The notes under the pieces: generated by a model
Databases searched by the model: none
What the model was told of the DNA's origin: nothing
Seen by the model: the letters and a program-made list of their open reading frames with translations, nothing else
Translations under genes and position numbers: made by a program
Assembly: GCA_038087875.1 (NCBI GenBank)
Contig: CM075984.1
Location: 41,354,001 to 41,418,000, forward strand
Reading direction: 5' to 3'
Length of the DNA stretch: 64,000 nucleotides
DNA from: Malacoraja senta
Taxonomy: Eukaryota
In this document: positions 26,776 through 49,992 of the stretch, piece by piece
Numbering within the stretch: position 1 is the stretch's first letter
Layout of the letters: the number at the start of each line of letters is the position of its first letter

Positions 26776-27745
26776 ACATTAAATTGAGAGCCCAGTCCAC
26801 TCATGACAAAATTCCTAGTCCACATTTATTATTACCATTTAGTTTTCTTCAGTGATGTGTCACAAGGGGACAGGTCAAATTTGTCTTGGTATAAAAAGGT
26901 GTTTAGTTTTACTTGCATACCTATATGCTATAATAAATTATATAATAAATATAGAATGCTATAATAAATTCTGCACACTTTAAATTTTATGGCATTTCAA
27001 ACAAGAAGTTGGGAATTGATCCCAACTTGCTTTTAATGGGTGATTCACAAAGAGCACTGCAAAGTCTCGGATTCTTAAAATAACAGCTTGAGGATATTTA
27101 AATACAAAACAGATCAGAGTGCTGTCAGTTTTATTGCTCTTGCAGAGCAGGCTTGTTGTATTTTCTTTATGGATGAACCCCCCCCCCCCCCCCCCATCAC
27201 AATGGTAAATGTTGCACGCTGGTTTGGTTCAAATCTATGTTCAGACACTTCAGTTGAAATATTCATACTGTGGGCGATTTTTACTGCTTCATGGGTGTCA
27301 CATAAGCAGACCCAAACACAAATGTCGTGTTTGTAAGGAGGGTCTCAACCCGTAATGTCACCCATTCCTTCTCTCCAGAGATGCTGCCTAACCCGCTGAG
27401 TTACTCCAGCATTTTGTGTCTATCTTCGTATTTGTGAGTGTTCTACAATTTGTGTGGAACAAGACAATTTGTGTGTTTTACAAATGTGTGGGAGTAAATT
27501 AAAATGTTGGTGCAACGCGATTTAGGCAGCATCTAGAACTAATATTTTAGGCTATGAATCATTCATCACAACTTTTAAGAAGAGAGCTATTAGACCTTAA
27601 AGTGCAGAAGGGGAGAGGTGTGAAGCTTAAGGCAGAGAGGAGAGACTACGCACAATCGATCTGTGTTTGTGAAGCATCAAGACCTAAATTCTTGATAAAA
27701 CAACATTGACCTGAAACATAAAGCACAAATTTCTCTCTCCACAAG

Positions 27746-28026
27746 GGGCAGCACAATGGCGCAACGGCAGAACTGCTGCCTTACAGCGCCAGGGACTCAG
27801 GTTCGATCCCGACATCGGGTGCTATCTGTAAGAAGTTTGTAAGTTCTACCTGCGACCGTGTGATTTTTTTTTGCACATTCCAAGGCCGTGCTGGTTTGTA
27901 GGTTAATTGGCTTCTCCAAAATTGTCCCTATGTGTGTAGGATAGATCTAGTGTATGGGTGATCATTGGTCGGCACGGACTCGGTGGGACAAAGGGCCTGT
28001 TTCCACGGTGCATCTCTAAACTAAAC
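27746..28026 (+). mobile_element. HE1-like SINE
   Basis: tRNA head GGTTCGATCCC and CTCTAAACTAAAC tail. Confidence 0.8.
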
Positions 28027-28874
28027 TCTTAAGTTGAGTTTCCACAAATTTCTCTTTTTGCTCAGATTTCCAGCATTCATTCACACTGCACCACTTTTCC
28101 AAAAGTTTGGAAATGTTCAAATATATAAAACATTTTTCATGCTTTATATCACTCAAATAATTAGTTTCTACGATTGATGCATTTTACTTCATTTGGAATT
28201 TATTTGGAAGGAGGTAGGGGATATACATTAAATCCTGCCATTATTATTATGGGAAATTGCCTCAGTTTCAGAGTATGTGCTCCTATAAAAACTGTAGAAC
28301 CACCTGCTTAAGAAGCTTTTCATTTCTGAAATTTAATCCACGTCTGAGTGCAAATGAAGTATTATATTAAAACTTGGATAATATTAAAACTTGGGACAAT
28401 AATATAAATTGAGCGATTAGATCACAACTCAAATTGTCAAACAGAGTTCATACAGTTGAGAAAGCTAAAAAGGGGGTTCTGAAGAAGGGTCTCGACCCAA
28501 AACGTCCCCCTTTCCTTCTCTCCACAGATGCTGCCAGTCCCACGGAGTTACTCCAGCATTTTATGTCTATCTTAAACATAAAATAAGTTTGGAAACAACA
28601 ATACTCAATTGCAAAACATGGCCTTTAATTTAACCCCATTGTTGGCAGTCCAACACAGGGCAGACAAAGGCTGGTTTGTAGCAGAGCTATTAAAAATTCC
28701 CATGGTGCAGTCAATGATGTTCAAGAAATAGGATTTGCAATATATTGTTGAGCCATACAAGCAGCAGCTTTATCAGGTAATATGGAATGCATGTGATAAA
28801 AATGGGTGCAGATTTTATCATGAAAATATAATTCATTTCTCCTGCCAAGTTCAGGAAGTTAAAAATGGACTTAC

Positions 28875-29016
28875 CATGATGCCAATGGTTTTTTGTGCTG
28901 CACCCGTTTTAAAGACCTCAGCAATTTCTTTTCTTTGTTTCTCTGTGAATTTGGGTTGGTTTCTCTGCAACACTTTCAGCTTTACCCTGTCCTCCTTCAA
29001 AACTGTTACAATGTCC
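28875..29016 (-). CDS. PER2: PER2 exon 22, CRY-binding coiled region (RDIVTVLKEDRVKLKVLQRNQPKFTEKQRKEIAEVFKTGAAQKTIGIM)
   Basis: aatcag acceptor, gtaagt donor, 142 nt; VLKEDR..L..LQ..QP.FTE.Q..E Period_C motif. Confidence 0.93.
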
Positions 29017-31171
29017 CTGATTTGTAAGAAAGAAAGGCATGCTGATTATACTGCACTGGGAGATAATAAATATTATAAAAAAAACATCAGCAATACATGT
29101 GCTTGACATATGAATCTCAGCCATCTCTCTACAAAATGATTGGTATCAAGGTAAGGCAAAGTCACTCAGAACTAGAATTTCACTGCACAATCCATGCATG
29201 GTGGTTAATGCATTTTTCATTTTAATGACCGTGTAACCCATTTAAAACAATCAGTTAATGCTCCAGATAAAGTGAAGAATAAACCTGAAGAGAATTGGAA
29301 GCAGACGAACACATTAAATGTTCAAATACTGGAATCACACTTAAGCACATCTTAAATTCAGGATTGTTGCTTAGGGTTAGGAATCAGTTTAAGTCAAAAG
29401 GTTGAGGGTGATGGGTAATTAGAACTAGCGGCAAGCTAAAAGATGGGCACCAGAGCTTTGAGCAGCCCAGTTTAAAAAGAGTCGAGGGAAATGCTGTCCT
29501 GATGACATAGGAAAAGTTAATTTGTATGAGCGTTTCAGTAGCAGATGGACTGCTACTCGAGTAACGTAAAGAGTTGGAAACAGGAAGCCCACTGATGGCA
29601 CAGAGATACAAGGTCTCAGGATCAAATTCCAGATAAAATTGACCTTTTATGCAGCAGTGTTTCTATTTCATGGGCCAAAGACTGGGTTATTAACTTTAAT
29701 GGTTAATGTTGGCTGAAAAGTAGTGCAGAAATCAGACATACAGCTACAGTACATATAATTTATTATGAAATAGATAGTGCAGAATGATTCTCTTGTCTTT
29801 AGATTTCAGAGGGCTATGAATTATTTAATGTTATGCTGGATCTTTGTATTATCTGAAACCCAAAGATCAGATTACAGGTCTTGCAATTAGATTATTACCT
29901 TGTAAATACAATTGGGCATCTTTTACTCTTCGGACAAAATTGGACTCGGAGATTAAATTATTTAATCACTGCCAGGATTAGAAATCCCGTAAGGTCCCCC
30001 GACAGAATAGTGTTACTGACGCAAACCTTGAACCTTAAAATAATTAGTTGATCTCACCCAGGGCAAAGGCTGAAGCACCACAAACATGGAGAGGTCCTCG
30101 AGGGCAATGAAGTAGAACTTTCAAAATAGCTCAGAGATACATCCACTAATTGTCATTTGGTGAACTTGGCCTTGAGTGTGCATGTGGGATGAAAACTAGA
30201 CTCGACTTAGATTGGATGTCCTCCATGGTTGAACAAACTACCAGCCACCTACCAGCTAAACCACATGCCAGTGTGTAATAAGTTAATGTAATAAGAGAAC
30301 TGCTAGCAATCGAGGAGACGTACTACAGAAAGGAAAAGCACCTTCACCACAAGGGGAAAAGTGGAGATTGAATTAAAAATTCTATTGAAGTGCAACTCTG
30401 ATAACCTGCCATCTAATTCCTGGATTCACCAACATCATTGCTCACCAGGCCCAGACTCCCATGCTCTCTTTACTTTCAGATTCCCAATTCCCTTTTAAAA
30501 CTCACAGGGTTCACTGGAAAAATTATGCCACTATGTGACATCCAAAACAAGTGAAGTGTTTTGAGGTAATAATGAGAGTGATATCCAAAAGAAAAATCTC
30601 AATCTAGCACCAAGTTCCAACTGTGCTGTATTAACAAAGTTTTATTGTATTCGAAGCACTGCCCAGAAAACATGAACCAAGGCCATACTATAAATACGTT
30701 CTTTCTGGTCAGTGCAATTCCAATTCTCATACCCTCAAAATGAATACTTTTGAGTATTCTCCCTGTAGGTTTTCCCTGCATTAAACTAAACTTCTTGTTC
30801 TTCTTTCCTTTCTGCAGCCACGACTTTGTTGAACATGGGCCTTGGCGGGTCAGATGGCATCATTGATTGTCTGCCTGCCTATTATTGTATGGGCTTTACT
30901 TTTATTTCTGTGGAGTCAACAGGAATAGAAAGTGAGCTAACCATGTGGGACTAGCCCAGAAGCAAGCGATAACTGAAAACTCTCTCCATACAAATGATAT
31001 AAATATTTCTGCCAGTGGCTACCAATTGCTTCCCACCATGTCCTAGGATACACTTGGTCTGGTCCCGGGGATTTTTCTTCTTTTGTATGTATTAACACCA
31101 CAGGCACCTTCTCTTCTGTAATGCAGATCTCTCGAAGAGATCATTACTAACCTCTCTAGCATCTTTCCACC

Positions 31172-31893
31172 AGGGGCGCCAGGGCGATGGCTGCCCTGCC
31201 GGCAGTCTGTTCGTTTTTCCATTCTTTTTGTTATTTTTTAGTGTTTAAAGTTTGTTTGAATGTTCTTCGGTTTGTTTTATGTGGGGGAGGGGGGAGGGGA
31301 TCGGGTGATTTTTTTTTTCAAGTTCCTACCTTGCCGGAGATGTGGTTAATTTTCAGATCACATTCTCTGGCGTGTTCTGTGGCCTTCCATCGCTGGAGCT
31401 GGAAGCCTCCTCGGACTGTGAGCCCCACCGCAGGGCGCGGACTTAACATCGGAGCTGATCCCTTGCCTGGGATCGCTCCCACCGCAGACTTTACCATCAA
31501 GAGCTTGCAGTCGGGAGAGGCTGGTCGGGAGCTCCAACGTCACAGAAGGTTCGACCAACCCCGACGCGAAGTTCGATCGCCCAGCGCGGGGGAGCTGACA
31601 CCCCCCCCAATGCAGGAGCTGATCGCCTCGACGCAGAGGGCCCGAACGCCGCCGGCTACGGGAGTCAAGATCGTCCCGTCAACGGGGGCTCGAGGCCCAA
31701 GACCGAGGAAGAACTAAGGGAAGGGACTTGTATTTCGCCAATGAGGAATGTGTAGGAGTCACTGTGGTGGATGTTCATGTTAAAATGTGTTTTTGAGTGA
31801 TCTGTTGCTTTTAAGTGTATGACTGACCTGGCCAATGAAATTCCTCGTATGTTGCAAAACATACTTGGCGAATAAAGTGTGATTCTGATTCTA
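31172..31893 (+). mobile_element. Unclassified interspersed repeat with GC-rich body and AATAAA/(TGATTC)n tail; related copy at about 54510-55345
   Basis: Shared 5' GGGGCGCC..TGGCTGC, T-rich tract, TTATGTGG..GGGGG..GGGG and GC-rich body in both copies. Confidence 0.5.
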
Positions 31894-32079
31894 TGTCTTT
31901 CTACATTGTGAAGCCAAACAGCAAATATTCATTGAACACCTCACCCATTTCTTTGGTTCGATGCGTACATGACCTTATTGATCTTTAACCTCTCCCTAGG
32001 TACTCTTTCGCCTTAAGACAGAACAATATGGAGAGCCTTTGAAGTTGGAGTCAACACAATTGGGATTTTGGGCACTTAC

Positions 32080-32179
32080 CTGAATGGTAGTTGATAGGTC
32101 ATCATGGTTCTCGCGTCTATTTTTTCATTGTCAGAGTCGTTGCTTCCAAAATATTTGCTGCTGCTCAAGCAGCTACTAC
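32080..32179 (-). CDS. PER2: PER2 exon 21, shortened (GSSCLSSSKYFGSNDSDNEKIDARTMMTYQLPFR)
   Basis: attag acceptor, gtaagt donor, 100 nt with phases 1 and 2 correct; SKYFGS and MMTYQLP Period motifs. Confidence 0.92.
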
Positions 32180-32504
32180 CTAATCATGACAAACAAAGAA
32201 AAACAAAGGCAAGATAAGCATCTATTGCCTCCCCCAAATTGATCTGGAGAATTAGGCTCTCCACCTTTCACTTTATTTGGCTCTCCACTTGAGCCACCTT
32301 CTGGAACTGTTGCAGTCCTTCTGGTTTGGTTTATTTTGGAGATACAGCATGTTCACAGGCCCTTTGGCCCGAGTCCATGCCAAGCATTGATCACCCGTAC
32401 ATACTAGTTGCACGGTATTCCACTTCCCCATCCACTCCCTACATATTAGCTGCAAGTTTACAAAGGCCAGTTAACGTACAAGCCCACATGTCTTTGGTGA
32501 ATAT

Positions 32505-33228
32505 CAGGGTTTGTACACTTGGAACAGCTTTAAATTCGAGGACTTTAAGGACTTAAGGTCCAAAAATCCAATCTTCAAGGACCAAAATCCAGCAAACATT
32601 GATGGTTTATTGGAGACTTTTATATAAATTGCTTCGTATTGGATGATTTGATTCTGTACCAAATAAAAGTAAGAAAGAAGGTTGGTTGGTCTCCATCTCA
32701 AATTTGATTGAAAATCATGTTTTGCACACCTCTGGTACAAAAAGCACAGCAGAAAAATCAACTTTCAATTCAAAGTTCCTTCGAAGTCATGAATATAGCT
32801 CGAATTATTGCCAAATGCCTATTGGAATTTGGAGTTGAGACCTTGTTTTCTGTTGTGTTACTTGTGTGCTCTGATGTACAGACACTGATTTTCAGGGAAA
32901 TCTGAGAAGGTGATCAGTCAATCCATTAGTCCTGGTTGCAGAGAACGACACTAAACTACATAATAATTACACACAAGATGGTTAACCTATCTATATTCGT
33001 ACTTCAATAGAGCACTGATGGTCCATTTACTCATCTCTTGGTTGTTCAATCTGAAACCATAATGGAAAACTTTGTTTTTCAACGAGTCCCTGCAAACCTG
33101 TACTGTCCCTGCCTGCTTCAAAGTCTCCACTATTTCAATGACTTTCAAGGACCCATGATAAATCCAAGGACTTAAGGCCTTGAAAACAGATTCAAATTCC
33201 AGGACTTTCAAGGACCATACGAGCCTTG
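32505..33228. mobile_element. Degenerate non-autonomous DNA transposon (hAT-like ends) with subterminal AGGACTT(T/C)AAGG repeats
   Basis: CAGGGTTTGTAC at the left end, decayed ATACGAGCCTTG at the right end, repeated subterminal motifs at both ends. Confidence 0.4.
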
Positions 33229-33529
33229 GAAAATGCTTTGCCATCTCCAACCATTGCCAGAGTGTTGCCATGGTCGGAGATGTATTCTATTAAACAGGTT
33301 AACTCCTTCCAGAGCAATAGATGGTCTGATCTAATGTGCTGTTTATTTATTTTTGTCACCCAACCCCAAGCAAAAGCAACCCATCAGTTAACTTACACAA
33401 GCTCTTAAGCAAAGAAAACCATGGGCGACATGGATCTTTTGTTTAAAAAAAAAGAATAGATCCACTGATAATTCAGACAGTTGTTAGTGTTACATTATGG
33501 GTTAGGTTAAGACAAAAGGACAAAGTTAC

Positions 33530-33704
33530 CTGTGTCAGTTCCGGACATTCCACAACCATTGGACGGAGAGCCCGAGGAGCCGGACCTTGTCGATTCCATA
33601 CTCCCCGAGCCGGCAGAGCCGACGTCTGACTGCAATAACAGCTTCAGCATGTCAGTAGAAGTGGAGTGAGAGTCACTGTTCTGGGCTTCAGTAGGGGATT
33701 CATT
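33530..33704 (-). CDS. PER2: PER2 exon 20 (NESPTEAQNSDSHSTSTDMLKLLLQSDVGSAGSGS...)
   Basis: ctaaag acceptor, gtaact donor, 175 nt; QNSD..STS..LLxLLL and SG-rich tract. Confidence 0.92.
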
Positions 33705-34731
33705 CTTTAGAGAGCAAAAAAAAACCATACAATATGTTCACACCAGACAGGCAATATATTATTAATTAAAATGTCAAATTGCTGCATAGTGAATTAAAAG
33801 AATAAAAGAATTGCTACAGACATTTTGGACATGGTATACAGCACATGGCGTTACTGAGTAATGGGGTATCAGTCTTGTGTATCGTCAGGATAATGTAGGC
33901 TAACAATACTGTCTAGGAGACAATACGATGGACCACAAGTTAATGGCAAATGTCTAAACATTGTTGCTTATTCATCTTCTCACCATGAAAAAACAAAGTA
34001 CGGGGAAGGGGGGGGTTGGAGGAAGTGAATTAAAAAGGGTGCAACATATGCAATTTAAAAATAACGCAGGAAATTATAATGGAGAAGTATGGATGACATT
34101 TTTTTTTAAATGGGTCAATTTTAAATCCTTGTCCCATTTAAGAGTTTTTCCAGACACAATGTTTTCTCCCCACTTTATTCTGGGACAAAGAGCTTTAGAG
34201 ACTGGGCAATTGGCATCATGCGCCATTGCAGTCGATTGCTGACAGCCAGGGGATCAGTTGGTGTGAGTGGCATGGAAGTGTCAGGTCTATAGATTAGTGG
34301 TTGAATGTAGAGTCGTTGGAAGATGGCAATGGGGGATGGGTGCTAGAATTGAGGGAGTGAATTGGATCGGGAACAGGTAGGGGAGGGAATGAAAGGGTTA
34401 CAATGAAGGAGTGGGCAAGTTCAAATCTGTTTCCAGAACAGGACCTCACAGATTGGGAGTGGTCCCCTTGGCTAATGCTGAAGACCTCAGGAGTACGATG
34501 AATATCTTCTTCTAAACAAGCGCTCACATCTATGGGTGAGCAGGCGCACATCAAAATCCCCCTAGTAGAAGTGGCAGCCAGGCACAATTCATGCACAAAT
34601 GTATCAGATGCAGGGAGGGCCCAGAAGGAAAGCTCAGAGACTTTATTCTATTTACACTGTCCTCAATTTTCTCGATTTATTTTTCTCAGAAATTTAATCC
34701 AATTATTGTTTATAATTTGTACGCCACTTAC

Positions 34732-35426
34732 AAGATCTGCTTCGTCCTTTGCAATGGTGCCCACATTTGTACCGTTCATGTTGCTTGTCATTACTCTTCG
34801 GTCCGCCATTAATTCATTTCCAGCTACAAGTCCAATTGCTTTCGTAGATCCGGGCCCCACATCCAGAAGGTTCAGCTGCAAAGGTGAAATGGACCTAGAA
34901 TGGAAATTTGGAGGGGAAGTGTGGCCTTGTTGCCCTTGACTCCCTGGTGCAGGCTGGTCACGATACTGCGGTGCAAAGGCTGGCGGAGCCTTGAATAAAT
35001 TCCATGCAGGTAAAAAGTTTGGTTGCGAAGGGAATGGCGGCTTACTTGCAAAAATTGGCTGGTGCGCCGTCTCGGGTCCCGGAGACATGATGTAATTGGG
35101 CAACACAACTGCCACCAGCGGGGATACGAGTGGCGCGGAAAATGGTGGAGTCTGAGGATTGTAATGAAGAGCCTGAGCAGCAAAGTTGGCCAGAGATGGG
35201 TCAGCTGCAAAAGGCATGCCTCCAGGGGTTGGAAACATCGGCAGCTGGTAGGTAGGTATGAGTGCAGTAATTGGTGCGGGCCAAGGGTGGAGTCTATGAT
35301 TGGTTCTTCCGCTTGCCGCGCCATCAGATGATCCTTGCTGCTTGATGCGCTTCGTTTTAGGCTTCCTATTCTTCCCGCTTTTTTTGTGCCCGGGCTCTCC
35401 ACGGTTCCACGCAAATCCTCGAGAGG
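34732..35426 (-). CDS. PER2: PER2 exon 19: NLS (KKSGKNRKPKTKRIK), proline-rich region, SRSISPLQLNLL
   Basis: tttgtag acceptor, gtaagt donor, 695 nt, phase 1 to 0. Confidence 0.93.
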
Positions 35427-35869
35427 CTACAAAGGAAACAAATGGGACTTGTAAGTATTTGCTTCTAACCTTATTCTGGACATTTTTATATTGAAAGGTT
35501 GATGAAAGGAGTGACATAGATATTGGTCCCACAACTCCTGAAATTAACTGTTTAAAATTGAAGCTCAAACAAAGATTCTCCACAATTCAAACTTATTTTA
35601 GCAATCAGAGACAAGACATTGGCAGATCGTCCAAGAAGCAGTTTATAAAAGTTCCATGAAGGCAACTGGAATGACTATAACAGGCAAGGCTACATGAGAA
35701 TTTAACAAAACAAAAACAAAAACCATAGGATAATATGCTAAATTTAGCCCGAAATGAAACATGGTACATTGATCCTCAATTGCCTCTTCTCGTAGATAAT
35801 ATACAGCAACACATTTTGTATGCTTACAAGTAAAATTAATTTAAAAACCCCTTATTTGTAAAATCTTAC

Positions 35870-36136
35870 CACGATCCCTTGAATATTCTTTGTGCCGATA
35901 TTGCAAAGAGGATTTGCAAGTAGCTCCAAATGGTTTTAGTTTACTCAACTCCTTGAACTTGCTCAAAAATATCTGCTCTTCTTTCTGTGTATGAGCAGCT
36001 AGAACTTCTTTGGTGAGACCGAGTTTCTTGAATGCTTCCTTTTCCAGGTTCACAGAAGATGCTGTGGTGACCAGCGTAGCAGATGTCATGTTCTCTGCTG
36101 GATCTGCAATGCCAAGTCCATCCTCCAATAGGATTT
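35870..36136 (-). CDS. PER2: PER2 exon 18 with CK1-binding motif B (FKKLGLTKEVLAAHTQKEEQIFL)
   Basis: gacag acceptor, gtaaga donor, 267 nt. Confidence 0.96.
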
Positions 36137-37209
36137 CTGTCAAGATTTTAAGTTTAAAATTGTATGCGTAAGAGGGTGTTTTTTCTGCATGAAGGCAAGT
36201 GCATCAACTATAATGGCATAATAACTCCCCTAATGAGCAAGTGCTCCAGTTGGTCAGGCATGAGTTTGACCGTGGTAGCATTGCTGGAATTAGCAACCAC
36301 ACATCTGGGCATAGGAGTGGGGAAACAAATACACGTGTTGCGTGTACACACATAAGTAGCATTCAGAAACATTGTGGTATAGCCTGTGGAGCTAATATTG
36401 TTTCTTCAGAAGGGCACCTCAATTGGGAAATACAAATTACTTATGCCTCAAGAACTTACATTTTTTTAACCATAAATCACACTAAATAGCCATCACAGGG
36501 CTAAAATCACAGTAAGTTCTGTTCATTCACCATCTCGGTGCCTGATAATCTACATTGGAACCTGGCTCGCTAATAGTTCAAATTTAAAACTTTAGTTCTT
36601 CCACACAGTCTTTTCCACCTCTGTAGTCTCCTCTGGCATATTTTCCATAGTAATCCATGCTCCTCTAATTTTGGTGCTTCATTGCTCCATGTTGGAAGAC
36701 CATGTGTTCAGCTGCCAAGGCCCTAACCCATGGAACTAAAACTCTCCACCTCCATTCCAGTTTCCTAACTTAACATGTTCACAACATCTAGAAACAAGGA
36801 GCTGCAAATGCTGGTTTATACACAAAAGGACACAAAGTGCTGGAGTAACTCAGCATGTCTGCCTGACCTGCCGAGTTACTCCAGCACTCTGTGTCCTTCA
36901 CAAACTCTACCTTTTAGACAAAGCTTCTGAGCTATGGCCCTACCATCTCTTTATGTGGCCTACAATTAATGACATTTTAATCCTGTGAGATACTGCAAAA
37001 TGATTTTGCTACGTCAAGTGTGCTAAAAAAAAAAGTTGTGGGTGCTGTGAAATTATTAAATATCGCATTTATTGGTCACTAAAAATCAATATTCTTCTCC
37101 TTCCATGCTCAGGTCAGGACATTGAAGCTTCACAGAAATGCTTGCAGTGCGTGTATTAACCAACTTGCACCTCCTCTTGAGAGATCTTTTAGAACGTGAA
37201 TTTCAGTAC

Positions 37210-37368
37210 CTGCATCTGCCTGCGGTTTCTTGTCTCCCACATGAACAATGGTGCTGCTGTAACTTCCTCGACTGGTGACGCTCGCTGCCTTCCTTCGCAA
37301 GGCGCGTGGTGCCAGAAGTGTGCCAACAACTGCTCCAGAAGGCATCTTCTTTGCAGACTTTAATGGAG
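37210..37368 (-). CDS. PER2: PER2 exon 17, FASP region (ALRRKAASVTSRGSYSSTIVHVGDKKPQ)
   Basis: cttgtag acceptor, gtactg donor, 159 nt; SYSSTIVHVGDKKPQ is PER2-like. Confidence 0.95.
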
Positions 37369-37849
37369 CTACAAGGAAAGCAATTCCGCAGGTCAAATAC
37401 TCGCATTTATACTTTATCTCCGATGGATGACTTTGTGAAACATACCGAATTTGGCTTTCGATAAACACTCAGTGGTTACTAAATGACTAAGATATGTTGG
37501 GCAAAAAAATATATATATATATACAAAACTAAATAATGGAAATATTTAATAAATCAGGCAGCATTCTTGGAGATAGAAACAGAGTTAATTTTTCAGATCT
37601 TGATCAGAACTGGAATAATAATTGTTTCTTTCTTCAGAGATGCTGCGTGACATTCTGTGACCTCCAACATTTTGTTTCTAGCATCTGGGTTTGTTTTTAA
37701 AGCAATAAAGATAGGCTAATAAGCCTCAGAAACCTCATGGCACCATACAGATTAAATCTTTGAATCAAGTCAGACGTTCCGTACATTCTGTAGCTTGGTA
37801 GGTAATTTGAAACAAAACTAAACACCTCAATTTCAGACTTGGTAAATAC

Positions 37850-37956
37850 CTTTACAATCATTCACGATATCAACTTTTCGTTTGTCGTCATCCGATGGCG
37901 ATGAAGAACCACACTTCCGTTTTGTAGTCCACGGAATATTGTAGCTATCCAGATAT
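37850..37956 (-). CDS. PER2: PER2 exon 16 (RYLDSYNIPWTTKRKCGSSSPSDDDKRKV...)
   Basis: tttgcag acceptor, gtattt donor, 107 nt; RYLxS..KRKC motif. Confidence 0.9.
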
Positions 37957-38587
37957 CTGCAAAAATACCAAAGTAACAAAAATCAACGAGGTAACAGAAA
38001 AGAGAGAAACAGACTCATTCGACATATTATTTAATCATTTTTCTCTCAACTTTAAAGCAGTATTCTGGTGTATCTAAAAAGGGCACAAGACAAAAGTGTG
38101 TATGTGCGTTTTAAACAGTGATGAAGCAAATATTTTCTGATCTTACAAGTCAAAAGGGTCAATGTGGCTCAATGGTGCCGTCTCGCCCGACTCAGCAGGC
38201 CATCAGGCTAACTTCTGAACATAGTTGATGCTTCAGTGTGGCATTGAAAGTGTGCCACACTGTCGAACGTGACTTGTTTCAGGTAAAGCAATAAACCTTG
38301 GATGTAAAAGATGCCGTGCATTTTTTACACTGAAATAGCAGAGGATATCCAAATCTATATACCTGCCACCTTCACATGAGCAAAAGGATTGATACATTTG
38401 CCGAAAAGTCAACTACCATGATTCAAAGGAGGCTCAATATGTGTATGTTTCAACTTTTACGTCGCATGCTACAATATTTAAGCTGATTAAAACTTGTGTT
38501 TTATTTTAAACTTTCTTGTTTGAGCTCTGGGTACTCAGCCTGCTGGTTGCCATTACTATTGCTGAGCCCAAGATTTCTACTGGAGCT

Positions 38588-38845
38588 GGTTTTAGTTTTA
38601 AGATGCAGCACGGCAACAGGCCCTTCGGGCCACCGAGTCCAAACTGACCAGTGATCACTCATACCCTCGTTCTATCCTGCACACAAGGGGGGGAATTTAC
38701 AGAAGCCAATTAATCTGCAAACTCGCACGTCTTTGGAATGTGGGAGGAAACCGGAGCACCCGGAGAGAACCCATGTCGTGTCAGGCAGAACGTCCAAACT
38801 CCATGCAGACGGTACCCAAGGTCAGGATCGATCCAGGTCACTGGG
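38588..38845 (-). mobile_element. Diverged HE1-like SINE
   Basis: V-domain GTCTTTGGAATGTGGGAGGAAACCGGAGCACCCGGAG on the plus strand. Confidence 0.7.
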
Positions 38846-39042
38846 GCTGGCTGGTGTCAGTTAGCAACCTATGTTAGGAAAGATGAAATGTACTTCACAG
38901 AGATCCAAGTATCTCTGTGGCTGCTTTCTTAAAGGCCATTCATGAGAGTTGTCACTTCACAACTGATGATAAAATCCAGGTCAACAAATAAAGCCTTGTA
39001 GTTTTGGTAAATACATTTGTTCAGGTCCAGAATGCCACTCAC

Positions 39043-39208
39043 CTTATTACACTATCCAGACAATTGATTTGCTGATAGCAATATCCAGCATGTTCCTCAC
39101 ATCTTGGTTCATCCACGAGCATGTTCTTTCCAGCACTACTTGTTCCAGTACCCTTGGATGGGCTGGCTTTAACATCTTTAGTCTGTTTACTTGTCTCTTT
39201 TTGTGTTC
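39043..39208 (-). CDS. PER2: PER2 exon 15 with CK1-binding motif A (YQQINCLDSVIR)
   Basis: tttgcag acceptor, gtgagt donor, 166 nt. Confidence 0.93.
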
Positions 39209-39702
39209 CTGCAAAATATATGCCCTTCTACAATGAGAACAATGCGTAAAATTCTGAAGTAAGGAGAGATCAAGTCTTTTGTTAGTTTTCCCTTAATTTA
39301 AAAAAAAAACAGGTCATATTTATTTAAATTGGCTTTTCAAATACTTCAGTCAAAATGAAGCTAGATGTATTATAGCCAGACTCCCTTCGTCTTATTCTTA
39401 TCTGGTTCTCAAAAATGGTAGGAACTGAATATTGAAAAAGTATACATATTCAAGTAAAATTGTAGTCCCAAAGTATTTAAAGGCAAATAGCAACATGTTT
39501 ACATTGTTCCTTACATTGATGTTTTCTATGTAAATCCAAATGACTACATCAGGTCCATATTCACAGAATAAGAGTGAATGAAACAAGCACAGCTGTAATG
39601 GCAAATGTCATTCTTGGACTCATGGTGCTTTTCACTCAGAATTTGTTTAAATCATTTACGTATATGCCTAGATAATGACTGCAAAATAATTAAGTCTATT
39701 AC

Positions 39703-39805
39703 CAGTTCTGTGTCTGCACTTTGATTCACTCTTTATTTTGTTGAATTCTGTCTGTCCTCGAATTCTTCCTGTGTGGGGATCTTTACCAGCTTTCCAAACC
39801 ACCAT
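39703..39805 (-). CDS. PER2: PER2 exon 14, poorly conserved linker (MVVWKAGKDPHTGRIRGQTEFNKIKSESKCRHRT)
   Basis: ctttctttcag acceptor, gtaata donor, 103 nt; supplies the needed phase 0 to 1 bridge. Confidence 0.75.
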
Positions 39806-40180
39806 CTGAAAGAAAGAGACAAGGGACTAAAGGTTAATGATTTCCTCCCAAAATTAATGACTGCTCAAGAGCAGACTCTGCTTTTGAGTCACAAAAAAAC
39901 TAGATAGTGAATTCAGGATGTACTAGGCCAACTGCTGAATGAACTAATGATGGCAGAAAATTGTTAAAGCAGTATTTTCAACTGCATTCAAAGAGTAAAT
40001 GAAAATATTATTAACTCCAGTGCTCCATTTTCTATATGGGAGCTGACAAACTTGTTTCGGTGGTATCATTAGAGTCTCAAAGCCAAATGTTCTCAAAACC
40101 AAGTGCCACCCTTTAACGTAATCTAAAACAACATTTCCATACATTAGTAAGGGAGAGCTTCACAGTCAAAAGACACCTTC

Positions 40181-40225
40181 CCATGGGCATTTAAATTGAG
40201 CCCATCTCAATTTAAATGCCCATGG
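40181..40225. repeat. Perfect 20-bp inverted repeat with 5-nt loop
   Basis: CCATGGGCATTTAAATTGAG-CCCAT-CTCAATTTAAATGCCCATGG. Confidence 0.95.
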
Positions 40226-41052
40226 AAAGGCAAAACTATGTCTCTTGGCAAACGATTCCTTGCATTTTTCAAAGAATAACACAGGTGCCCAGCCATTTTT
40301 TGGCTCAGTCAACATCACTAAACTAGATTATTTCCATATGTTTCTCACTGCCACTTTTGTGCAAAGCTAACTGCTATCTTCTCCTACAATACACTTTTCC
40401 TGCAATACATCACGTTAAAAATAATTTAATTGATTTCAAAGTAATTCGGAATATCTGGAGATCACCAAAAGGCGCTATACAAATGCAAATCCTTTAGAGA
40501 GTCACTATGACTCACGATCAGACATCTTTGTAATTCTTAAGAGTTTTACAAAGAGCAAATATTTATTTGTCTACAAAGCTATATTCATTTAATTGGCTCT
40601 TTCTACTTGTTTTAAGAGCAACAATTTCAGGCTTATCGATGGACAACATCACCTACATGTTATTGTCTGATTATAAGCATTAATTAATAATCATTAAAGA
40701 TCAATAAAGAAATAAATGTAATTCCTACTGAACAAATACGAAATGAATACAAAGCCCCACGATACTGCAGTTTGGAGAATTGAAATTACAAATTTAAGGA
40801 CCGTATATCCTAACTAAACTAAAATAGAGACCCATAAAATCTGGGATACAGAATAAAAATTACTCTAACGAGATTTATATGCAATAAAAATAAACGCACA
40901 ATTTTTTTTCAACTTGCATTTCTGATGTCTGCGTAGATGCAGCCTCGCATTAAGCTGCGATACCAAACATTTCTAGGAGCATAACCCCTGATTTATGCAT
41001 GATAATCAACATATTTGTTTGCATGAATTAGCTTGTGGAAGAGATGACTTAC

Positions 41053-41184
41053 AGGTTTGTGCAGTTGTCTCTCTTCATTGATGTTGCCATTAGTATCAAT
41101 GGAAGAGGCAACACTGATGATCTGTGCATGGGATCTACTACTGACCAAACTTCCATACCCACTGGAACGATTATTGTAAACAGG
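41053..41184 (-). CDS. PER2: PER2 exon 13 with beta-TrCP phosphodegron SSGYGS (41149-41166)
   Basis: ttttag acceptor, gtaagt donor, 132 nt; PVYNNRSSGYGSLVSSRSH. Confidence 0.94.
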
Positions 41185-41287
41185 CTAAAATAAGAAAGCA
41201 TAACTGTCTTAATAGAATTTAAAGCACTGAATTAGACACAAATTGCATTTAAATCTGAAAACACTCATCAATGTGAATTAGTTTTAC

Positions 41288-41396
41288 CTGCAGCAAGAGC
41301 TGTTGAATCTGCTCAGTGATGGTCTGTATTTCAGGATGAAATGCCTTCAATTCACTACAGCCCGGAGCAGCAAACACATCTTCATTCAAAGGACCT
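41288..41396 (-). CDS. PER2: PER2 exon 12 (GPLNEDVFAA...ITEQIQQLLLQ, NES)
   Basis: atgtag acceptor, gtaaaa donor, 109 nt. Confidence 0.95.
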
Positions 41397-41902
41397 CTAC
41401 ATATCAGAAGTTGAAGGGGAGATACAAGACTGAGTACCCATTTTACATCTGTCATCATTTAATATATGTGATTATGAATATGTACAATTTCAAAGATTAT
41501 GTTGCTATGGCCCATTATTTGACAGGCAAATATTCATAATAATAGTTCCAATTTTGTTTTTTGAATACTAGGGCAGTAACTGCAGTCAGATCGACTGGAT
41601 TCACAAAATAATCACTTCATAATTTCAGTCCCTATCATCACCCTGATTAATTAAAAGTATTTAAAATAATTCATAATTTTAGGATACATTTTTTTCCTCT
41701 ACATTAACACCCTTAGTTCTGCACATCCTTGCTACATCTTTTTTCTTTAAACAATCCCTGTTCACCTCTCAGTTAAAAATGATATTAAAAAGACACTGAA
41801 ATAATACCACAACATCAAATCAGTAACTGCTAGATACAATTCTAATTTGTTGCAAAATGTCTAAATTGATCAATCTTCATGATAATAATCCAAAGCACTT
41901 AC

Positions 41903-42056
41903 CTTCGGACTTTGTGTCTTCCGATAATGAAGGATACTTTTCTGCTCCAGGGATTGACAAAACTGGACCAACTGGTGTCAATTGTGATGTATTCACCACT
42001 TTGTGTGCAGAAACGGACTGGTGAATGTTCAAAAGGTTGCCCAGCATTTTTCAGTA
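41903..42056 (-). CDS. PER2: PER2 exon 11, PAS-B/PAC ([30 protein letters not shown])
   Basis: ctttcag acceptor, gtaagt donor, 154 nt; dimerisation Trp of PWSRK is intact. Confidence 0.97.
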
Positions 42057-42230
42057 CTGAAAGAATAAAAAATAATCAAGTAGCAGTTATCTATGTCTGA
42101 AGAAAGTTCCCAATCTGAAACATCACCCATCCTTTTTCTCTAGAGATGTTACCCGACCCACTGTTATCCATGCTGGAAAAAATGACCATCAGATAATAAT
42201 AATAATTAAATATTGCATCTACAAACTTAC

Positions 42231-42337
42231 TTTTTTTATGAATGCTTAGCATGAGAGGTTGATCATCAGGGTGTAGATGCATCATTACAGGCATTCCTAT
42301 GAGATCCTGAGGCAAATAACCTAATAGAGGAACAGCC
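42231..42337 (-). CDS. PER2: PER2 exon 10, PAS-B ([36 protein letters not shown])
   Basis: tcacag acceptor, gtaagt donor, 107 nt. Confidence 0.97.
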
Positions 42338-42680
42338 CTGTGAAAGAAAATGGAATGATTCAATAATTTGCACAATGCAATTTACAATAAGATATTAAAA
42401 ACGCATTGAGTCAAATACAAGGCTGTTTTAAAAATAAAGTTAAACAAAAAAAAACAGAACTATTACCCAAAACGTACTAACTGAAGCATTTAACTGAATT
42501 TAGGTAAATATCATTTGCCCTGTAGGGGGTGAAACCTAGCTTTTAAAACAATTTTGTTCATGTTTCAAGAATGGTAATTTTATTTGGAATTTAATTTTAC
42601 ACAAGGTTTAATACAATTTAGATTAAAAACAAATTGTTTCTTTCCGCCATTGCTGCGAAAATACTTAGTTCTCCACATAC

Positions 42681-42759
42681 CTCTCTTCAATGTCCTGAAA
42701 CACACAGCTGGGTGAGTGAGTGGTGGTAAACACCCTCTTATCATGGGGAATCTTTGGCG
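42681..42759 (-). CDS. PER2: PER2 exon 9 (APKIPHDKRVFTTTHSPSCVFQDIEE)
   Basis: tatcag acceptor, gtatgt donor, 79 nt. Confidence 0.95.
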
Positions 42760-43487
42760 CTGATAAAACATAAAACAAAATGAAACAATTTTAAAAATGT
42801 GCTGTCTAATCAAATTTTCCCTTTTAATCGGTTAAATTAGCCTTGGATCTTTCCAATGGCATCTATTAAGTTAAAAACTTCAAAGCATAATGCTCAGTCT
42901 GCTAATTCTCACACTCAATGTAGTCAACTACAAACGGTGTGCTATGCTTTGAACCAGGTCATACAGCTTCTTAGAATTTCAATATATTAATAACTATCAA
43001 TTTGGTTTTACATATAAATGCACAAGAACTGCAAATGCTGGTTATTACACAAAAGTACACAAAGTGCTGGAGCAACTCGGCAGGTCAGGTAGCATCTCTG
43101 GAGAACATGGATAGTTGACTTTTCGGGAGAAGGGTCTCAACCCAGGACGTCACCTTTCCATGTTCTCCACAGATGCTGCCTGACCTGCCGAGTTGCTCCA
43201 GTACTTTGTGTACGTTAGCTTCTAACAAATATCGTACTCTGAAGAGTACATGCAGTCAGCCTGGCATTAGGGGGCTGTCCAGGCTGCCTTTAAATTAAAA
43301 ATAAGTTCTAATCACTCATTATCTGACTCGTTCTTCCAGTTTTCCAGCTAGCCAGAAAAAATTGGTTGAATTTGGTTGAAGGATGTTACATCATTTAATA
43401 ACAAATATGATTTTGCAGATTTGGGGTGAGGAGAAAACACAATGAGTGTTTCCTTGCGAAAGATAATTTTGTTGATCATAATCTCAC

Positions 43488-43630
43488 CTTCATATCCCGA
43501 ATGCACCCTTTCAGCAAGCATCAGGCAGCATAGTTGGTCATCGTCATCATCAGATGCCCGAACCTTTGTAAGATAAGGCGTCACATGAAACGGATAGTAA
43601 TGGGTGCTCCGATCTCGCTGTTGGTTTCCA
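43488..43630 (-). CDS. PER2: PER2 exon 8, end of PAS-A (YYPFHVTPYLTKV...LCCLMLAERVHSGYE)
   Basis: tcacag acceptor, gtgaga donor, 143 nt. Confidence 0.96.
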
Positions 43631-45207
43631 CTGTGAAATGGATGGTGACAGTAAAGTTCAGAGTCAGACCAAAAATAGTGAAAACAGGTGACTTGCTCCA
43701 GCAGTGCACAACTGAAAGGGCACTGGCACGGCATGAAATTATGGCAACAAACAGTTTCACATCACTCTGGTTATTCCACCAGGTTCTTTCTGGTGTGTTA
43801 TGAGTTTTGCATCAGATGAACCCAAGGGGTGACAATTCACATGAAATGTTCTTTTCGGGGATTGTGAAGGAAATTAGCCCACATTGTCCTGACAGTGACC
43901 AACATGTTTTTACCCGACTGAAACACCATTAAGGTAATTGCAAAAGTTACCATTGGCCTTCAGACCCACAAACCTCTCAGTACAATCTAATCCTCTCCCG
44001 CGCCCAACCCATCAATATCACATATTGAAGATTGGCTCAGGCACCAACTCTCTGCTCACTTGGCAGTCCGATCCCCAAATCTCCACCCAGATTTCCTTCC
44101 TCTACCAACTACTGACCCTCCAATTTCCAACACTCCTTCTTGAGTCTAGTTCTATGACGACTGATCTCTGAATCTACTCCATACTCCTTCTCCAATTAGA
44201 CTCTCTATACTGACCACTGATCATTCATTCACACTAGTTCTCCATTACCCTACTTTGTCATTCACTCCCTACACACTAGCGGCAATTTACAGAGGCCATT
44301 TAACCTATGAACCCGCATGTTTTGGGGCTATGGGAGAAATCCAAAGGTTCAGGTACACTGAAAAGCGCAGAGTCTTAGGCAACAGTCAAGCAGTCTGGAA
44401 GCAGATTTGAAAGTTGGGTTCAAGGTGTTAGATTAGGAGGATTAGCTGGCTCCTGATTGGTACTGCGGTGACAGGGGAGAATGACCAGGTCCAAGGATGG
44501 CAGATGAGGAATGTGAACTCAGCGCTTAAGTGCTCTTAAGGATCTTAGAGGAAAGTGGTGGGCTCCAAAGGATTAGAAGGAATTGAAGGAAATGGAGCTT
44601 TGCAAATTTGTGGTTTGGGCCTAGGGTGGCAGTAGTGATGGGAGAAGGTGTAGTTTGGGCACAAACAGAACTCAATGATGAAAGACAGGTATTGAGAAGC
44701 CCTAGGCCTGCTCAAGAGTGGCCACACACAGGACAATGTGGTCCACATTCACTTGAATTGCTTCCAAAGGATCAGTGCATTGGGAATTACATCAAGGACA
44801 CGACGGGCAAATCACTACCAGGGTTGCCTGGGCAAACATCTGGAGAAACTCAATGTTAATTGTGCATTTCACTCCAGGACAAATTGATTTCATATTGCAT
44901 GGTGCTGGAAAAACAGAATTATGCAATTGAACTTCTGGGTCGATATTTCTATCAATTTTTTAAAAAAGCTGTTTTTTTTGCACAACTTAATGGTTTGGGA
45001 TTTTCTCTGAAGTCTACAGAGCCAGTCATTTTCATAAAGTCCAATCCAGAGCTCCCAAGTACTAGCAAGTTCCTCACAGGTTATATGGGTGATGATCATC
45101 ATACAGATCAGGTCAATGCTCTTGTGTACAGGACCCAGTACCACGATCTTCCCCACACAACCCTTTCACTCGTTGGTTCATTCCTCTCCAACCTTTCCAG
45201 TACTCAC

Positions 45208-45259
45208 CTAATCCGACAGAAGAAGGACTTCTCCTGCATACAATCGAAAGGGGATGAAC
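45208..45259 (-). CDS. PER2: PER2 exon 7 (SSPFDCMQEKSFFCRI)
   Basis: ctttcag acceptor, gtgagt donor, 52 nt. Confidence 0.93.
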
Positions 45260-45537
45260 CTGAAAGACAGCAACAGTAACAAGTTAAGCAATTGCACTTA
45301 ATGGAGATAGACAAAATCTAAGTATCTGCTCATACAGTTAAACACCACATTATTAATTAATGGAGTCTTTTGTGAAGACAAAAGTGTGCAAAAAGATCAA
45401 ATATGATGTTGTCATATTTGGTAACAGTTTTATCAAATGGTGTGATAATCTTCCTGGTATATTCTGCACGACTAAACAAGGTTCTGCCAAGTTTAGAAAT
45501 AACACATGGTTAATAATCTCTAAATGAGAGGGAAAAC

Positions 45538-45592
45538 AGAAACCACATCTTCGACTGCTGAGGCGAGAAACCACATCTTCGACTGCTGAGGC
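45538..45592. repeat. Exact 27-bp tandem duplication (period 28)
   Basis: AGAAACCACATCTTCGACTGCTGAGGC at 45538-45564 and 45566-45592. Confidence 0.9.
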
Positions 45593-46074
45593 CTCAACCT
45601 CAAAATTCCCACTGCAAATGGAGCTAAAAGAAAGCATATTCAGACCATTTCATCCTCAACGTGAACTTTGGGTCCAAGGATCTTCAGTTGCCATCTCGTC
45701 TGGAGTCTTTGACATTCTCACGTTGACAGTGCCATTCTGAGTGAGACGCAATAGGGAGGCGATGGTCAGCTCAAACAAGGTGTGATGCACATCTTCTTCT
45801 GGGAGGATAAGGAAGAAGGGGAACGCAGTCTTCCTGGGGTGGGTTTCTCCACCAAGAATGAACTATGTTGGATCTGCGTGGCTCTCCCTGTGGGATAAAT
45901 GATGCTCACAGCCCTCAGACTCACTCTAATGCAGAATCAACACATTACATTAACCAGTGCATGTGTCCTAATTAAGAAGAGTGTTTGCAGCAATCTTGAG
46001 AAAACCTTGACCATTGAAATAAAATTGTCAGCAAGCTCAATCCACCAGTTTCTCATGCTGTTCAGTGAAGACCA

Positions 46075-46638
46075 GTGCCCGCAGAGATGATGTATAGGGC
46101 CCCAGTGAGACCACACCTGGAGTATTGTGTGCTGTTTTGGTCCCCTAATTTGAGGAAGGACATTCTTGCTATTGAGGGAGTGCAGCGTATGTTTACATGG
46201 TTAATTCCCGGGATGGCGGGACTATCATATGCTGACAGAATGGAGCGGCTGGGCTTGTATACTCTGGAGTTTAGGATGAGAGATCTTATTGAAACATACA
46301 AGATCATTAAGAGTTTGGACACGCTAGAGGCAGGAAACATGTTCCCGAAGTTGAGGGAGTTTAAGAAAAAGGGGCAAGCCATTAAGAATGGAGACGAGGA
46401 AACACTTTTTTCACACAGAGAGTTGTGAGTGTGGAATTCTCTGCCTCAGAGGGCGGGGGAGGCCAGTTCTCTGGACAATTTCAAGAGAGCGCTAGATAGG
46501 GCTCTTAAAGATAGTCAGGGGATATGGGGAGAAGGCAGGAACGGGGAACTGATTGTGGATGATCAGCCATGACCACATTGAATGGTGGTGCTGGCTCGAA
46601 GGGCCGAATGGCCTACTCCTGCACCTATTGTCTATTGA
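46075..46638 (+). mobile_element. CR1-type LINE 3' fragment (ORF2 C-terminus and 3'UTR)
   Basis: YRAPVRPHLEYCVLFWSP..IEGVQR..LGLYTLEFR..DLIETYKI; (CTATTG)n tail. Confidence 0.9.
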
Positions 46639-49379: not shown

Positions 49380-49501
49380 AGCATTCTTTGAGGTGTATTC
49401 AGAAATAATATTTTCTACTTCATCAATGGTGAAGGATTTCATGTTCAAGCTATTTGATTCAGTGTCATCATTCATGAGGAACTTGTAGTATTCTTCATTA
49501 G
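49380..49501 (-). CDS. PER2: PER2 exon 5 (ANEEYYKFLMNDD...IISEYTSKNA)
   Basis: ctgcag acceptor, gtaagt donor, 122 nt. Confidence 0.94.

Positions 49502-49952: not shown

Positions 49953-49954
<2 letters not shown>

Positions 49955-49989: not shown

Positions 49990-49992
<3 letters not shown>

What the first reader, a model, noticed from the sequence alone, without database searches (positions are those of the whole stretch)
37250..37300. FASP phosphoswitch cluster shortened by one SxxS unit and given a basic N-terminal flank
Seen: ALRRKAASVTSRGSYSSTIVH. Human is ALPGKAESVASLTSQCSYSSTIVH with five serines spaced i+3 (S662-S674). Here there are four (S-VT-S-RG-S-YS-S), a 3-aa deletion, and KAES becomes RRKAAS. 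Established: CK1 priming at S662 and sequential FASP phosphorylation stabilise PER2, oppose the degron and contribute to period length and temperature compensation; S662G causes familial advanced sleep phase. Inference: with the SSGYGS degron intact, the stability balance may be shifted, and R(-5)/K(-3) could hand priming to a basophilic kinase (Akt/PKA/RSK class).
Basis: partly seen in the sequence, partly recalled or inferred. Interest (0 to 1): 0.75.

Follow-up and report, generated by a model that had tools for sequence, protein, structure and literature searches.

The report
Four-serine PER2 phosphoswitch of sharks and rays
This skate's PER2 clock gene does have a stabilising serine cluster one unit short, but every shark, ray and skate sampled shares the deletion, so it is an old clade-wide variant and not a peculiarity of this genome.

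Summary
On the minus strand, exon 37368..37210 of a complete PER2 gene encodes ALRRKAASVTSRGSYSSTIVH. It has four serines at i+3 spacing and lacks three residues found in the five-serine form. Spliced RNA contigs from two related species and an identical DNA contig rule out an artefact.

The feature is not special to this genome. All 17 elasmobranch PER2 sequences carry the same 3-residue gap. The chimaera Callorhinchus and 265 bony-vertebrate PER1/PER2 proteins keep five serines. The deletion therefore dates to the elasmobranch stem. It removes exactly the human A664-S665-L666 equivalent.

The "basic flank" is a mix of ages. K(-3) is universal in vertebrates. R(-4) is shared by all cartilaginous fishes, including the five-serine chimaera. 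Only R(-5) is skate-specific.

The four in-register serines are invariant in elasmobranchs, while all six intervening positions vary. This argues that the pSxxS relay is still under selection. The degron and both CK1-docking motifs are intact.

Published CK1 work predicts weaker product inhibition from four sites. The proposed hand-over of priming to a basophilic kinase has no support: the Akt/RSK and PKA consensus residues are not met. A cyprinid per2 paralogue lost one unit independently.

The finding is moderately interesting as a natural experiment. This holds especially if PER2 is the only PER gene in these fishes, which is only partly tested.

The parts
37210..37368 (-). PER2 exon (the equivalent of human exon 17). 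It is 159 nt, phase 1/1, and encodes the FASP region.
   Evidence: ORF and splice signals. Spliced RNA contigs join 36136|37210 and 37368|37850. tblastn to skate PER2 gives 89-92% identity.
37241..37303 (-).
   Evidence: Translation and coordinate map.
37253..37282 (-). Four-serine FASP cluster SVTSRGSYSS. In-register serines are at 37282-80, 37273-71, 37264-62 and 37255-53.
   Evidence: The four serines are invariant in 17 elasmobranch sequences while all 6 intervening positions vary.
37289..37297 (-). Basic patch R(-5) R(-4) K(-3) before the priming serine.
   Evidence: K(-3) is universal, R(-4) is chondrichthyan-wide, and R(-5) is found only in the 5 skate sequences among 285 proteins.
37938..39077 (-). 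CK1-binding motif A (YQQINCLDSVIRYLDSYN), split over exons 39209..39043 and 37956..37850.
   Evidence: Spliced translation through RNA-supported joints.
35946..36023 (-). CK1-binding motif B (LGLTKEVLAAHTQKEEQIFLSKFKEL) in exon 36136..35869.
41149..41166 (-). Beta-TrCP phosphodegron SSGYGS, the opposing arm of the phosphoswitch. It is intact.
   Evidence: Translation.
24527..59057 (-). The whole PER2 coding region, about 22 coding exons.
   Evidence: tblastn with four chondrichthyan PER2 proteins. Pfam Per3-like_PAS-A, PAS_3/PAS_11 and Period_C on exons. Tree placement.

Best explanation
The exon encodes the FASP serine cluster of the skate's PER2. The cluster lies between the two CK1-docking motifs.

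Shown:
- A clean in-frame loss of three residues, the equivalents of human A664-S665-L666, happened once on the elasmobranch stem. This was after the split from chimaeras and before sharks and rays diverged. It has been kept ever since.
- The cluster is now S-x-x-S-x-x-S-x-x-S, that is, human S662, S668, S671 and S674 in an unbroken i+3 register.
- Skates later added Arg at -5. Most also have Arg at +1 of the second serine.

Inferred:
- CK1 delta/epsilon anchored on the docking motifs still primes the first serine slowly, then runs down the pSxxS relay.
- The phosphorylated cluster folds back into the kinase's anion sites 1 and 2. This restrains phosphorylation of the SSGYGS degron and so stabilises PER2.
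- With four sites there are two binding registers instead of three. The unit whose +1 Leu/Ile fills the small hydrophobic +1 pocket is gone, with Gln in sharks and Arg or Pro in skates in its place. Product inhibition of CK1 should therefore be weaker, unless it is compensated elsewhere.
- The RRK patch most likely modulates CK1 priming instead of recruiting another kinase.
For: - Gene identity: the gene spans 59057..24527 and matches skate PER2 exon by exon. It has PAS and Period_C domains. It nests with 100% support in skates, then batoids, then elasmobranchs, then with Callorhinchus, inside PER2 with PER1 as outgroup.
- Distribution: 17 of 17 elasmobranch sequences have the short form. Callorhinchus has PRKAESIVSFTSQCSYRS with five in-register serines. 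265 of 285 PER1/PER2 proteins have five.
- Nature of the deletion: removing V-S-I from the bony-fish consensus SVVSITSQC gives exactly the shark SVTSQC.
- Selection on the relay: 4 of 4 in-register serines are invariant against 0 of 6 intervening positions (Fisher p=0.005). STxVHVGDKK, both CK1 motifs and the degron are intact.
- The feature is real and expressed: spliced RNA contigs and an identical DNA contig.
- Mechanistic expectation, from Philpott et al. (bioRxiv 10.1101/2022.06.24.497549): stepwise loss of FASP sites raises priming rate and lowers inhibition. S671A and S674A shorten PER2::LUC half-life. [quoted passage not shown] They count 3p, 4p and 5p as 1, 2 and 3 microstates.
Against: - No phosphorylation, kinase or stability data exist for any elasmobranch PER2. 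The functional consequence is extrapolated from human peptides and cells.
- Compensation is untested. It could come from CK1 itself, phosphatases, the degron context or low body temperature.
- The invariance test uses related sequences and only ten columns.
- PER3 was not in the tree, so PER2-versus-PER3 orthology rests on database names, topology and a HES6-like neighbour that is only a lead.
Confidence: 0.8

Rival explanations
1. One reading: the basic residues before the first serine (R-5, R-4, K-3) pass priming of the cluster from CK1 to a basophilic kinase of the Akt/PKA/RSK class. This would uncouple priming from CK1.
For: Skates alone among 285 PER proteins have three consecutive basic residues directly before the priming serine. 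R at -5 together with a hydrophobic +1 (Val) fits part of the Akt/RSK pattern (own knowledge of consensus motifs).
Against: - K(-3) is present in essentially all vertebrate PER1/PER2, where CK1 is the demonstrated priming kinase (PMC6003379).
- R(-4) is present in the five-serine chimaera and in all sharks, so the flank did not arise with the deletion.
- Akt, RSK, S6K, CaMK and PKD motifs need Arg at -3. PKA needs Arg at -3 and -2. Here these positions are Lys and Ala (textbook consensus, not computed here).
- CK1 primed a FASP peptide that carried an added N-terminal polybasic RKKK tag.
Confidence: 0.07
2. Relaxed constraint: the cluster is decaying in skates as part of a general loosening of PER2. 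The remaining serines would have little function.
For: Batoid and skate PER2 lie on longer branches than shark PER2 (stems 0.17 and 0.13 against 0.02-0.05). Skates vary most inside the cluster (SRG or SPG, Y to C, S to R). Earlier notes of this scan report losses in the CRY-binding tail of the same gene (unchecked here).
Against: All four in-register serines, the RK, the STxVHVGDKK block, both CK1 motifs and the degron are kept in every elasmobranch sequence, including all five skates. The exon is included in transcripts. The reading frame is open throughout.
Confidence: 0.1
3. Artefact: an assembly error or a wrong splice choice produces an apparent 9-nt deletion.
For: None found.
Against: A DNA-run contig is identical over 36869..38645. 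RNA contigs from two other species cover the exon without gaps and with the same joints. The same gap is present in independently assembled genomes of 15 other species.
Confidence: 0.01

Closest known systems
FASP serine cluster of mammalian PER2 and PER1 (human S662-S674), the stabilising arm of the CK1 phosphoswitch
   Same: Same position between the two CK1-docking motifs. Same first serine with +1 Val and K at -3. Same i+3 spacing. Same downstream SYSSTIVHVGDKK block. Same opposing SSGYGS degron.
   Different: It has four in-register serines, not five. The S665 unit with its +1 Leu/Ile is missing. Ala replaces Glu at -1 (also seen in coelacanth and tilapia). Arg sits at -4, and at -5 in skates.
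Priming-intact in-frame FASP deletions made by CRISPR in human U2OS PER2::LUC cells (clones P2E17-25 and P2E17-36), and the S671A/S674A mutants (Philpott et al., bioRxiv 10.1101/2022.06.24.497549)
   Same: The priming serine is kept and one or more downstream sites are removed. This is the laboratory counterpart of the elasmobranch allele.
   Different: The laboratory alleles shorten period and half-life in a human background. The natural allele has been fixed for the whole history of sharks and rays, and its effect is unknown. The exact residues removed in the clones were not available in the text read.
Cyprinid per2 paralogue (Phoxinus phoxinus KAK7156922, Onychostoma macrolepis KAF4103855)
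   Same: It independently lost one SxxS unit, giving SVVSQCSYSS. This has the same architecture as the shark SVTSQCSYSS.
   Different: It lies in a teleost PER2 duplicate. In Onychostoma it coexists with a five-serine per2 (P0204). It keeps the ordinary PSKAD flank.
Callorhinchus milii (chimaera) PER2
   Same: It is the closest five-serine relative and already has the PRK flank.
   Different: It keeps the S-F-T unit and Glu at -1. Arg replaces the out-of-register serine (SYRS).
Drosophila PER per-Short domain (S589/S596)
   Same: It is a CK1/DBT-dependent phosphoserine region next to the kinase-docking motifs. It feeds back on the kinase through anion site 1.
   Different: It has a different sequence and no SxxS relay, and it is primed by NEMO. 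The resemblance is in how it works, not in homology of the cluster.

Membership tests
Vertebrate PERIOD 2 (PER2) | PAS-A and PAS-B domains and the Period C-terminal domain | tested here: met
   Pfam on single exons gives Per3-like_PAS-A at 1e-29 and 6e-11, Period_C at 2e-11, and PAS_3/PAS_11 just under the cutoff on a 51-aa piece.
Vertebrate PERIOD 2 (PER2) | Groups with PER2 and not PER1 in a tree | tested here: met
   The PER2 clade, including the window, is separated from three PER1 proteins with 100% SH-aLRT support. The window sits in the skate clade.
Vertebrate PERIOD 2 (PER2) | Distinct from PER3 | tested here: inconclusive
   No PER3 sequence was obtained for the tree. Support comes only from database names, species-like topology within PER2 and a HES-6-like neighbour at 2215-2721 (the atlas score of 0.87 is a lead only).
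FASP phosphoswitch cluster | Lies between CK1-binding motifs A and B | tested here: met
   Motif A is at 39077..37938, the cluster at 37282..37253 and motif B at 36023..35946, in one open spliced frame.
FASP phosphoswitch cluster | Non-consensus priming serine with small hydrophobic +1, followed by serines at i+3 | tested here: met
   S-V-T-S-R-G-S-Y-S-S. The register is unbroken.
FASP phosphoswitch cluster | Five serines in register | tested here: not met
   There are four here and in all 17 elasmobranch sequences, against five in 265 other PER1/PER2 proteins.
FASP phosphoswitch cluster | Sequential phosphorylation by CK1 delta/epsilon and feedback inhibition of the kinase | not testable with these tools
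   This needs kinase assays. It is inferred from the conserved register and docking motifs.
Beta-TrCP phosphodegron of PER2 | SSGYGS motif downstream of PAS-B | tested here: met
   41166..41149 translates to SSGYGS within PVYNNRSSGYGSLVSS.
Akt/RSK/S6K-type basophilic site (R-x-R-x-x-S) | Arg at -5 and Arg at -3 | tested here: not met
   R(-5) is present, but -3 is Lys, as in all vertebrates. The consensus is from established knowledge. No kinome scoring matrix was run.
PKA-type site (R-R-x-S) | Arg at -3 and -2 | tested here: not met
   Position -3 is Lys and -2 is Ala.

The most novel reading that the evidence does not exclude
Sharks, rays and skates run their clock on a single PER protein whose CK1-restraining cluster has lacked the S665-L666 unit since the elasmobranch stem. 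CK1 product inhibition would then be intrinsically weaker or differently registered than in bony vertebrates. Skates would have retuned the rate-limiting priming step further with a unique RRK patch, alongside their pared-down cryptochrome-binding tail. That would make elasmobranch PER2 a natural minimal phosphoswitch. It would show how many FASP sites are really needed for period setting and temperature compensation in an ectotherm.
Probability: 0.15. Interest if true: 0.7.

Novelty: new variant of a known kind. Interest (0 to 1): 0.45.

Why it matters
The number of FASP phosphoserines has been shown in human peptides and cells to set how strongly PER2 inhibits its own kinase, and thereby PER2 half-life and period. 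A whole vertebrate clade has kept a four-serine version with the +1-Leu unit removed. Possibly it has no PER1 or PER3 to fall back on. That makes it a ready-made natural test of the model:
- If elasmobranch peptides inhibit CK1 less, something else must compensate, and finding it would be informative.
- If they inhibit equally, the microstate model needs revising.

For genome annotation, the finding also corrects the impression that this is a skate oddity, and it dates each change in the flank.

I found no paper in the searchable library that describes the elasmobranch form. This is weak evidence that it is unreported.

Tried and rejected
- Solved structures: a search with the 52-aa exon peptide gave no match, even at E=10. 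The FASP peptides in CK1 complexes are probably under the 20-residue limit.
- DNA-level comparison: the look-up of encoding contigs for Callorhinchus P0146 and Heterodontus P0035 found nothing on record. The 9-nt deletion could therefore not be aligned at the DNA level and is inferred from the protein alignment.
- PER1 in cartilaginous fishes: a full-length search with Ambystoma PER1 listed Latimeria, Polypterus and Lepisosteus PER1, but no chondrichthyan PER1 among the best 120.
- Literature: searches for elasmobranch clock genes or a shark FASP gave nothing relevant.
- Rhincodon model P0043, which lacks the cluster (LSLPKILLED): not treated as a real loss. It looks like an annotation gap and was not checked.
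- A 14-3-3 or NLS reading of RRK was considered and dropped. The patterns do not fit (no Pro at +2, no K-K/R-x-K/R).

Full report
**1. What is in the sequence**

The minus strand between 37468 and 37130 is one open frame. Within it, an exon runs from 37368 (after an AG) to 37210 (before a GT). It is 159 nt long, in phase 1 at both ends.

Its translation is PLKSAKKMPSGAVVGTLLAPRALRRKAASVTSRGSYSSTIVHVGDKKPQADA. The RRK patch is at 37297..37289. The ten-residue cluster SVTSRGSYSS is at 37282..37253.

Reads were laid on 34700-39300:
- RNA contigs from two related species (5-8% of sampled words, several per cent divergent) join 36136 to 37210 and 37368 to 37850.
- They also join 37956 to 39043 and 35425 to 35869.
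- One 2238-nt RNA contig covers the whole exon with 7 substitutions and no gap.
- A DNA-run contig is identical to the window over 36869..38645.

The exon, its borders and its length are therefore real. Translating the five RNA-supported exons in series gives one open frame.

**2. Which gene**

tblastn with four cartilaginous-fish PER2 proteins lays about 22 coding exons on the minus strand from 59057 to 24527. Identity to skate PER2 is 85-97% in most exons. Single exons hit Pfam Per3-like_PAS-A, PAS_3/PAS_11 and Period_C.

I built a maximum-likelihood tree of 39 proteins. The stitched window protein is sister to P0031 (91% identity). P0031 is the representative of a 90% cluster that includes Amblyraja radiata PER2. 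These two group with Rhinoraja longicauda, then inside batoids, then inside elasmobranchs, then with Callorhinchus. Each step has 100% support. The whole group sits within PER2, with PER1 as outgroup.

No PER3 was available, so that distinction rests on names, topology and a HES-family gene at 2215-2721 (+). That gene has a Hairy_orange domain, and its nearest named atlas clusters are HES-6-like (a lead only). From my own knowledge, HES6 neighbours PER2 in human.

The other parts of the phosphoswitch are intact:
- the degron SSGYGS at 41166..41149;
- CK1-docking motif A, YQQINCLDSVIRYLDSYN;
- CK1-docking motif B, LGLTKEVLAAHTQKEEQIFLSKFKEL.

**3. How widespread the short form is**

Three searches supplied the sequences:
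- The exon peptide was searched against 1.84 billion representatives.
- Two homology searches were seeded with ray and shark PER2.
- One homology search was seeded with salamander PER1.

Together with 9 cluster members listed, these make 333 stored proteins. The count, made on the 324 stored at that point, found 285 with a recognisable cluster. Of those, 265 have five in-register serines, 19 have four and one was not parsed.

The four-serine set falls into two groups:
- The first holds every elasmobranch. Seven galeomorph and sawshark species have PRKAASVTSQCSYSS. Heptranchias has PRKAESVTSRCSYSS. Narcine, Pristis, Hemitrygon and Hypanus have PRKAASV[TI]SQGSYSS. The skates have RRKAAS[VI][TI]S[RP]GS[YC][SR]S.
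- The second is a cyprinid per2 paralogue (Phoxinus, Onychostoma and unnamed fragments) with PSKADSVVSQCSYSS. This falls in a teleost PER2 duplicate clade. In Onychostoma it coexists with a five-serine per2.

The chimaera Callorhinchus has PRKAESIVSFTSQCSYRS, with five in-register serines. Removing V-S-I from the bony-fish consensus SVVSITSQC yields exactly the shark SVTSQC. The event is therefore a clean three-codon loss of the human A664-S665-L666 equivalent.

Mapped on the tree, the changes fall in this order:

| Change | Where it arose |
|---|---|
| Ser to Arg at -4 | chondrichthyan stem |
| The deletion, and Glu to Ala at -1 (reverted or retained as Glu in Heptranchias; Ala also in coelacanth and tilapia) | elasmobranch stem |
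| Cys to Gly | batoids |
| Pro to Arg at -5 | skates only; found in no other of the 285 proteins |

K at -3 is present in essentially all of them.

**4. Is the shortened relay still under selection?**

Across 17 elasmobranch sequences, all four in-register serines are invariant and all six positions between them vary (Fisher one-sided p = 0.005). The sequences are related and the columns few. Even so, the pattern is what a pSxxS relay predicts and what decay does not. The RK before the cluster and the STxVHVGDKK after it are also invariant.

**5. What it should do**

CK1 delta/epsilon is the priming kinase of mouse PER2. It primes the first serine slowly and then phosphorylates the downstream serines in order (PMC6003379).

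Philpott et al. (bioRxiv 10.1101/2022.06.24.497549) report the following:
- The phosphorylated cluster binds back to CK1. pS662 sits in anion Site 1, pS665 at the active site with L666 in a small hydrophobic +1 pocket, and pS668 in Site 2.
- Limiting the number of sites step by step raises the priming rate and lowers inhibition.
- S671A or S674A shortens PER2::LUC half-life.
- CRISPR in-frame deletions that spare the priming serine but remove downstream serines shorten period, though less than loss of priming.
- They count one, two and three binding registers for three, four and five phosphates.

By inference, the elasmobranch cluster offers two registers. It has also lost the very unit seen in the crystal register. 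The residue after the second serine is Gln in sharks and Arg or Pro in skates, not Leu or Ile. I therefore expect weaker or differently registered product inhibition of CK1, and a shift toward degron phosphorylation unless it is compensated. None of this was measured.

**6. The basophilic-kinase idea**

The flank R-R-K-A-A-S matches neither R-x-R-x-x-S (Lys, not Arg, at -3) nor R-R-x-S (Lys and Ala at -3 and -2). These consensus motifs come from established knowledge, and no kinome matrix could be run here.

The only residue at the key -3 position is the Lys that human PER2 also has. R(-4) predates the deletion. A FASP peptide carrying an added polybasic tag was still primed by CK1. I rate the hand-over at under 10%. 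A modulating effect of RRK on CK1 priming is more likely, for instance through charge repulsion near the basic Site 1. That is also pure inference.

**7. Is PER2 the only PER here?**

Three pieces of evidence bear on it:
- The supplementary table of PMC11457068 lists Callorhinchus with Per1/Per2/Per3 = 0/1/0.
- My PER1 search returned coelacanth, bichir and gar PER1, but no cartilaginous-fish PER1 among the best 120.
- PER3 was not searched.

A single PER is plausible but not shown. If true, the four-serine cluster is the only FASP in these clocks.

**8. Verdict**

The feature is an ancient, conserved, clade-wide variant of a well-known regulatory cluster, and only Arg(-5) is particular to skates. 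It is a new variant of a known kind. I found no description of it in the searchable literature. Its value is as a natural counterpart of laboratory FASP truncations.

Noticed in passing
window 2215-2721 (+): An open frame carries a Hairy_orange domain (Pfam 1e-14). Its nearest named atlas clusters are HES-6-like. It is probably the last exon of a HES6 orthologue downstream of PER2, in line with the HES6-PER2 neighbourhood of other vertebrates.
   Followed up: partly
window 36790-36895 and 38608-38773 (introns flanking the FASP exon and the exon before it): Two short stretches have enormous summed contig depth in DNA and RNA runs (10^4 to 10^6 against about 28 elsewhere). Many loose ends and joints link them to each other. 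They look like copies of a very abundant interspersed repeat (SINE-like).
   Followed up: no
window 37497-37536: An A-run followed by a (TA)n microsatellite lies in the intron just upstream of the FASP exon. Reads appear cut there.
   Followed up: no
Proteins P0177, P0182, P0185-P0187, P0160, P0238-P0240 and others (39 of 324 without the motif): Many annotated 'isoform X2' PER1/PER2 models of turtles, birds, squamates, frogs and paddlefish skip the whole FASP exon. Two were read: P0182 and P0160. The exon is 159 nt in phase 1/1, so skipping keeps the frame. A FASP-less PER isoform may be widespread if these models reflect real transcripts. The skate RNA contigs include the exon.
   Followed up: partly
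P0043 (Rhincodon typus PER2 model): The model jumps from LSLP to KILLED and lacks the serine cluster and STIVHVGDKK. Its close relative Stegostoma has them. This is probably an annotation or assembly gap, not a real loss.
   Followed up: no
P0325 (Amblyraja radiata PER2, XP_032886980.1): This skate has RRKAASIISPGSYRS. Pro is at +1 of the second serine and Arg replaces the out-of-register serine, yet all four in-register serines are kept.
   Followed up: yes
P0001, P0029, P0030 against the window exon end 37210-37225: Stingray and sawfish models read GDKKQEILLED or GDKKPEILLED. Skates, Narcine and sharks read GDKK-x-QADAEILLED. The exon's 3' end is 3-4 codons shorter in those models, which could be an alternative donor or a lineage difference.
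   Followed up: no
tree: Batoid PER2, and skate PER2 in particular, sits on much longer branches than shark PER2 (stems 0.17 and 0.13 against 0.02-0.05). This points to faster protein evolution of PER2 in rays and skates.
   Followed up: no
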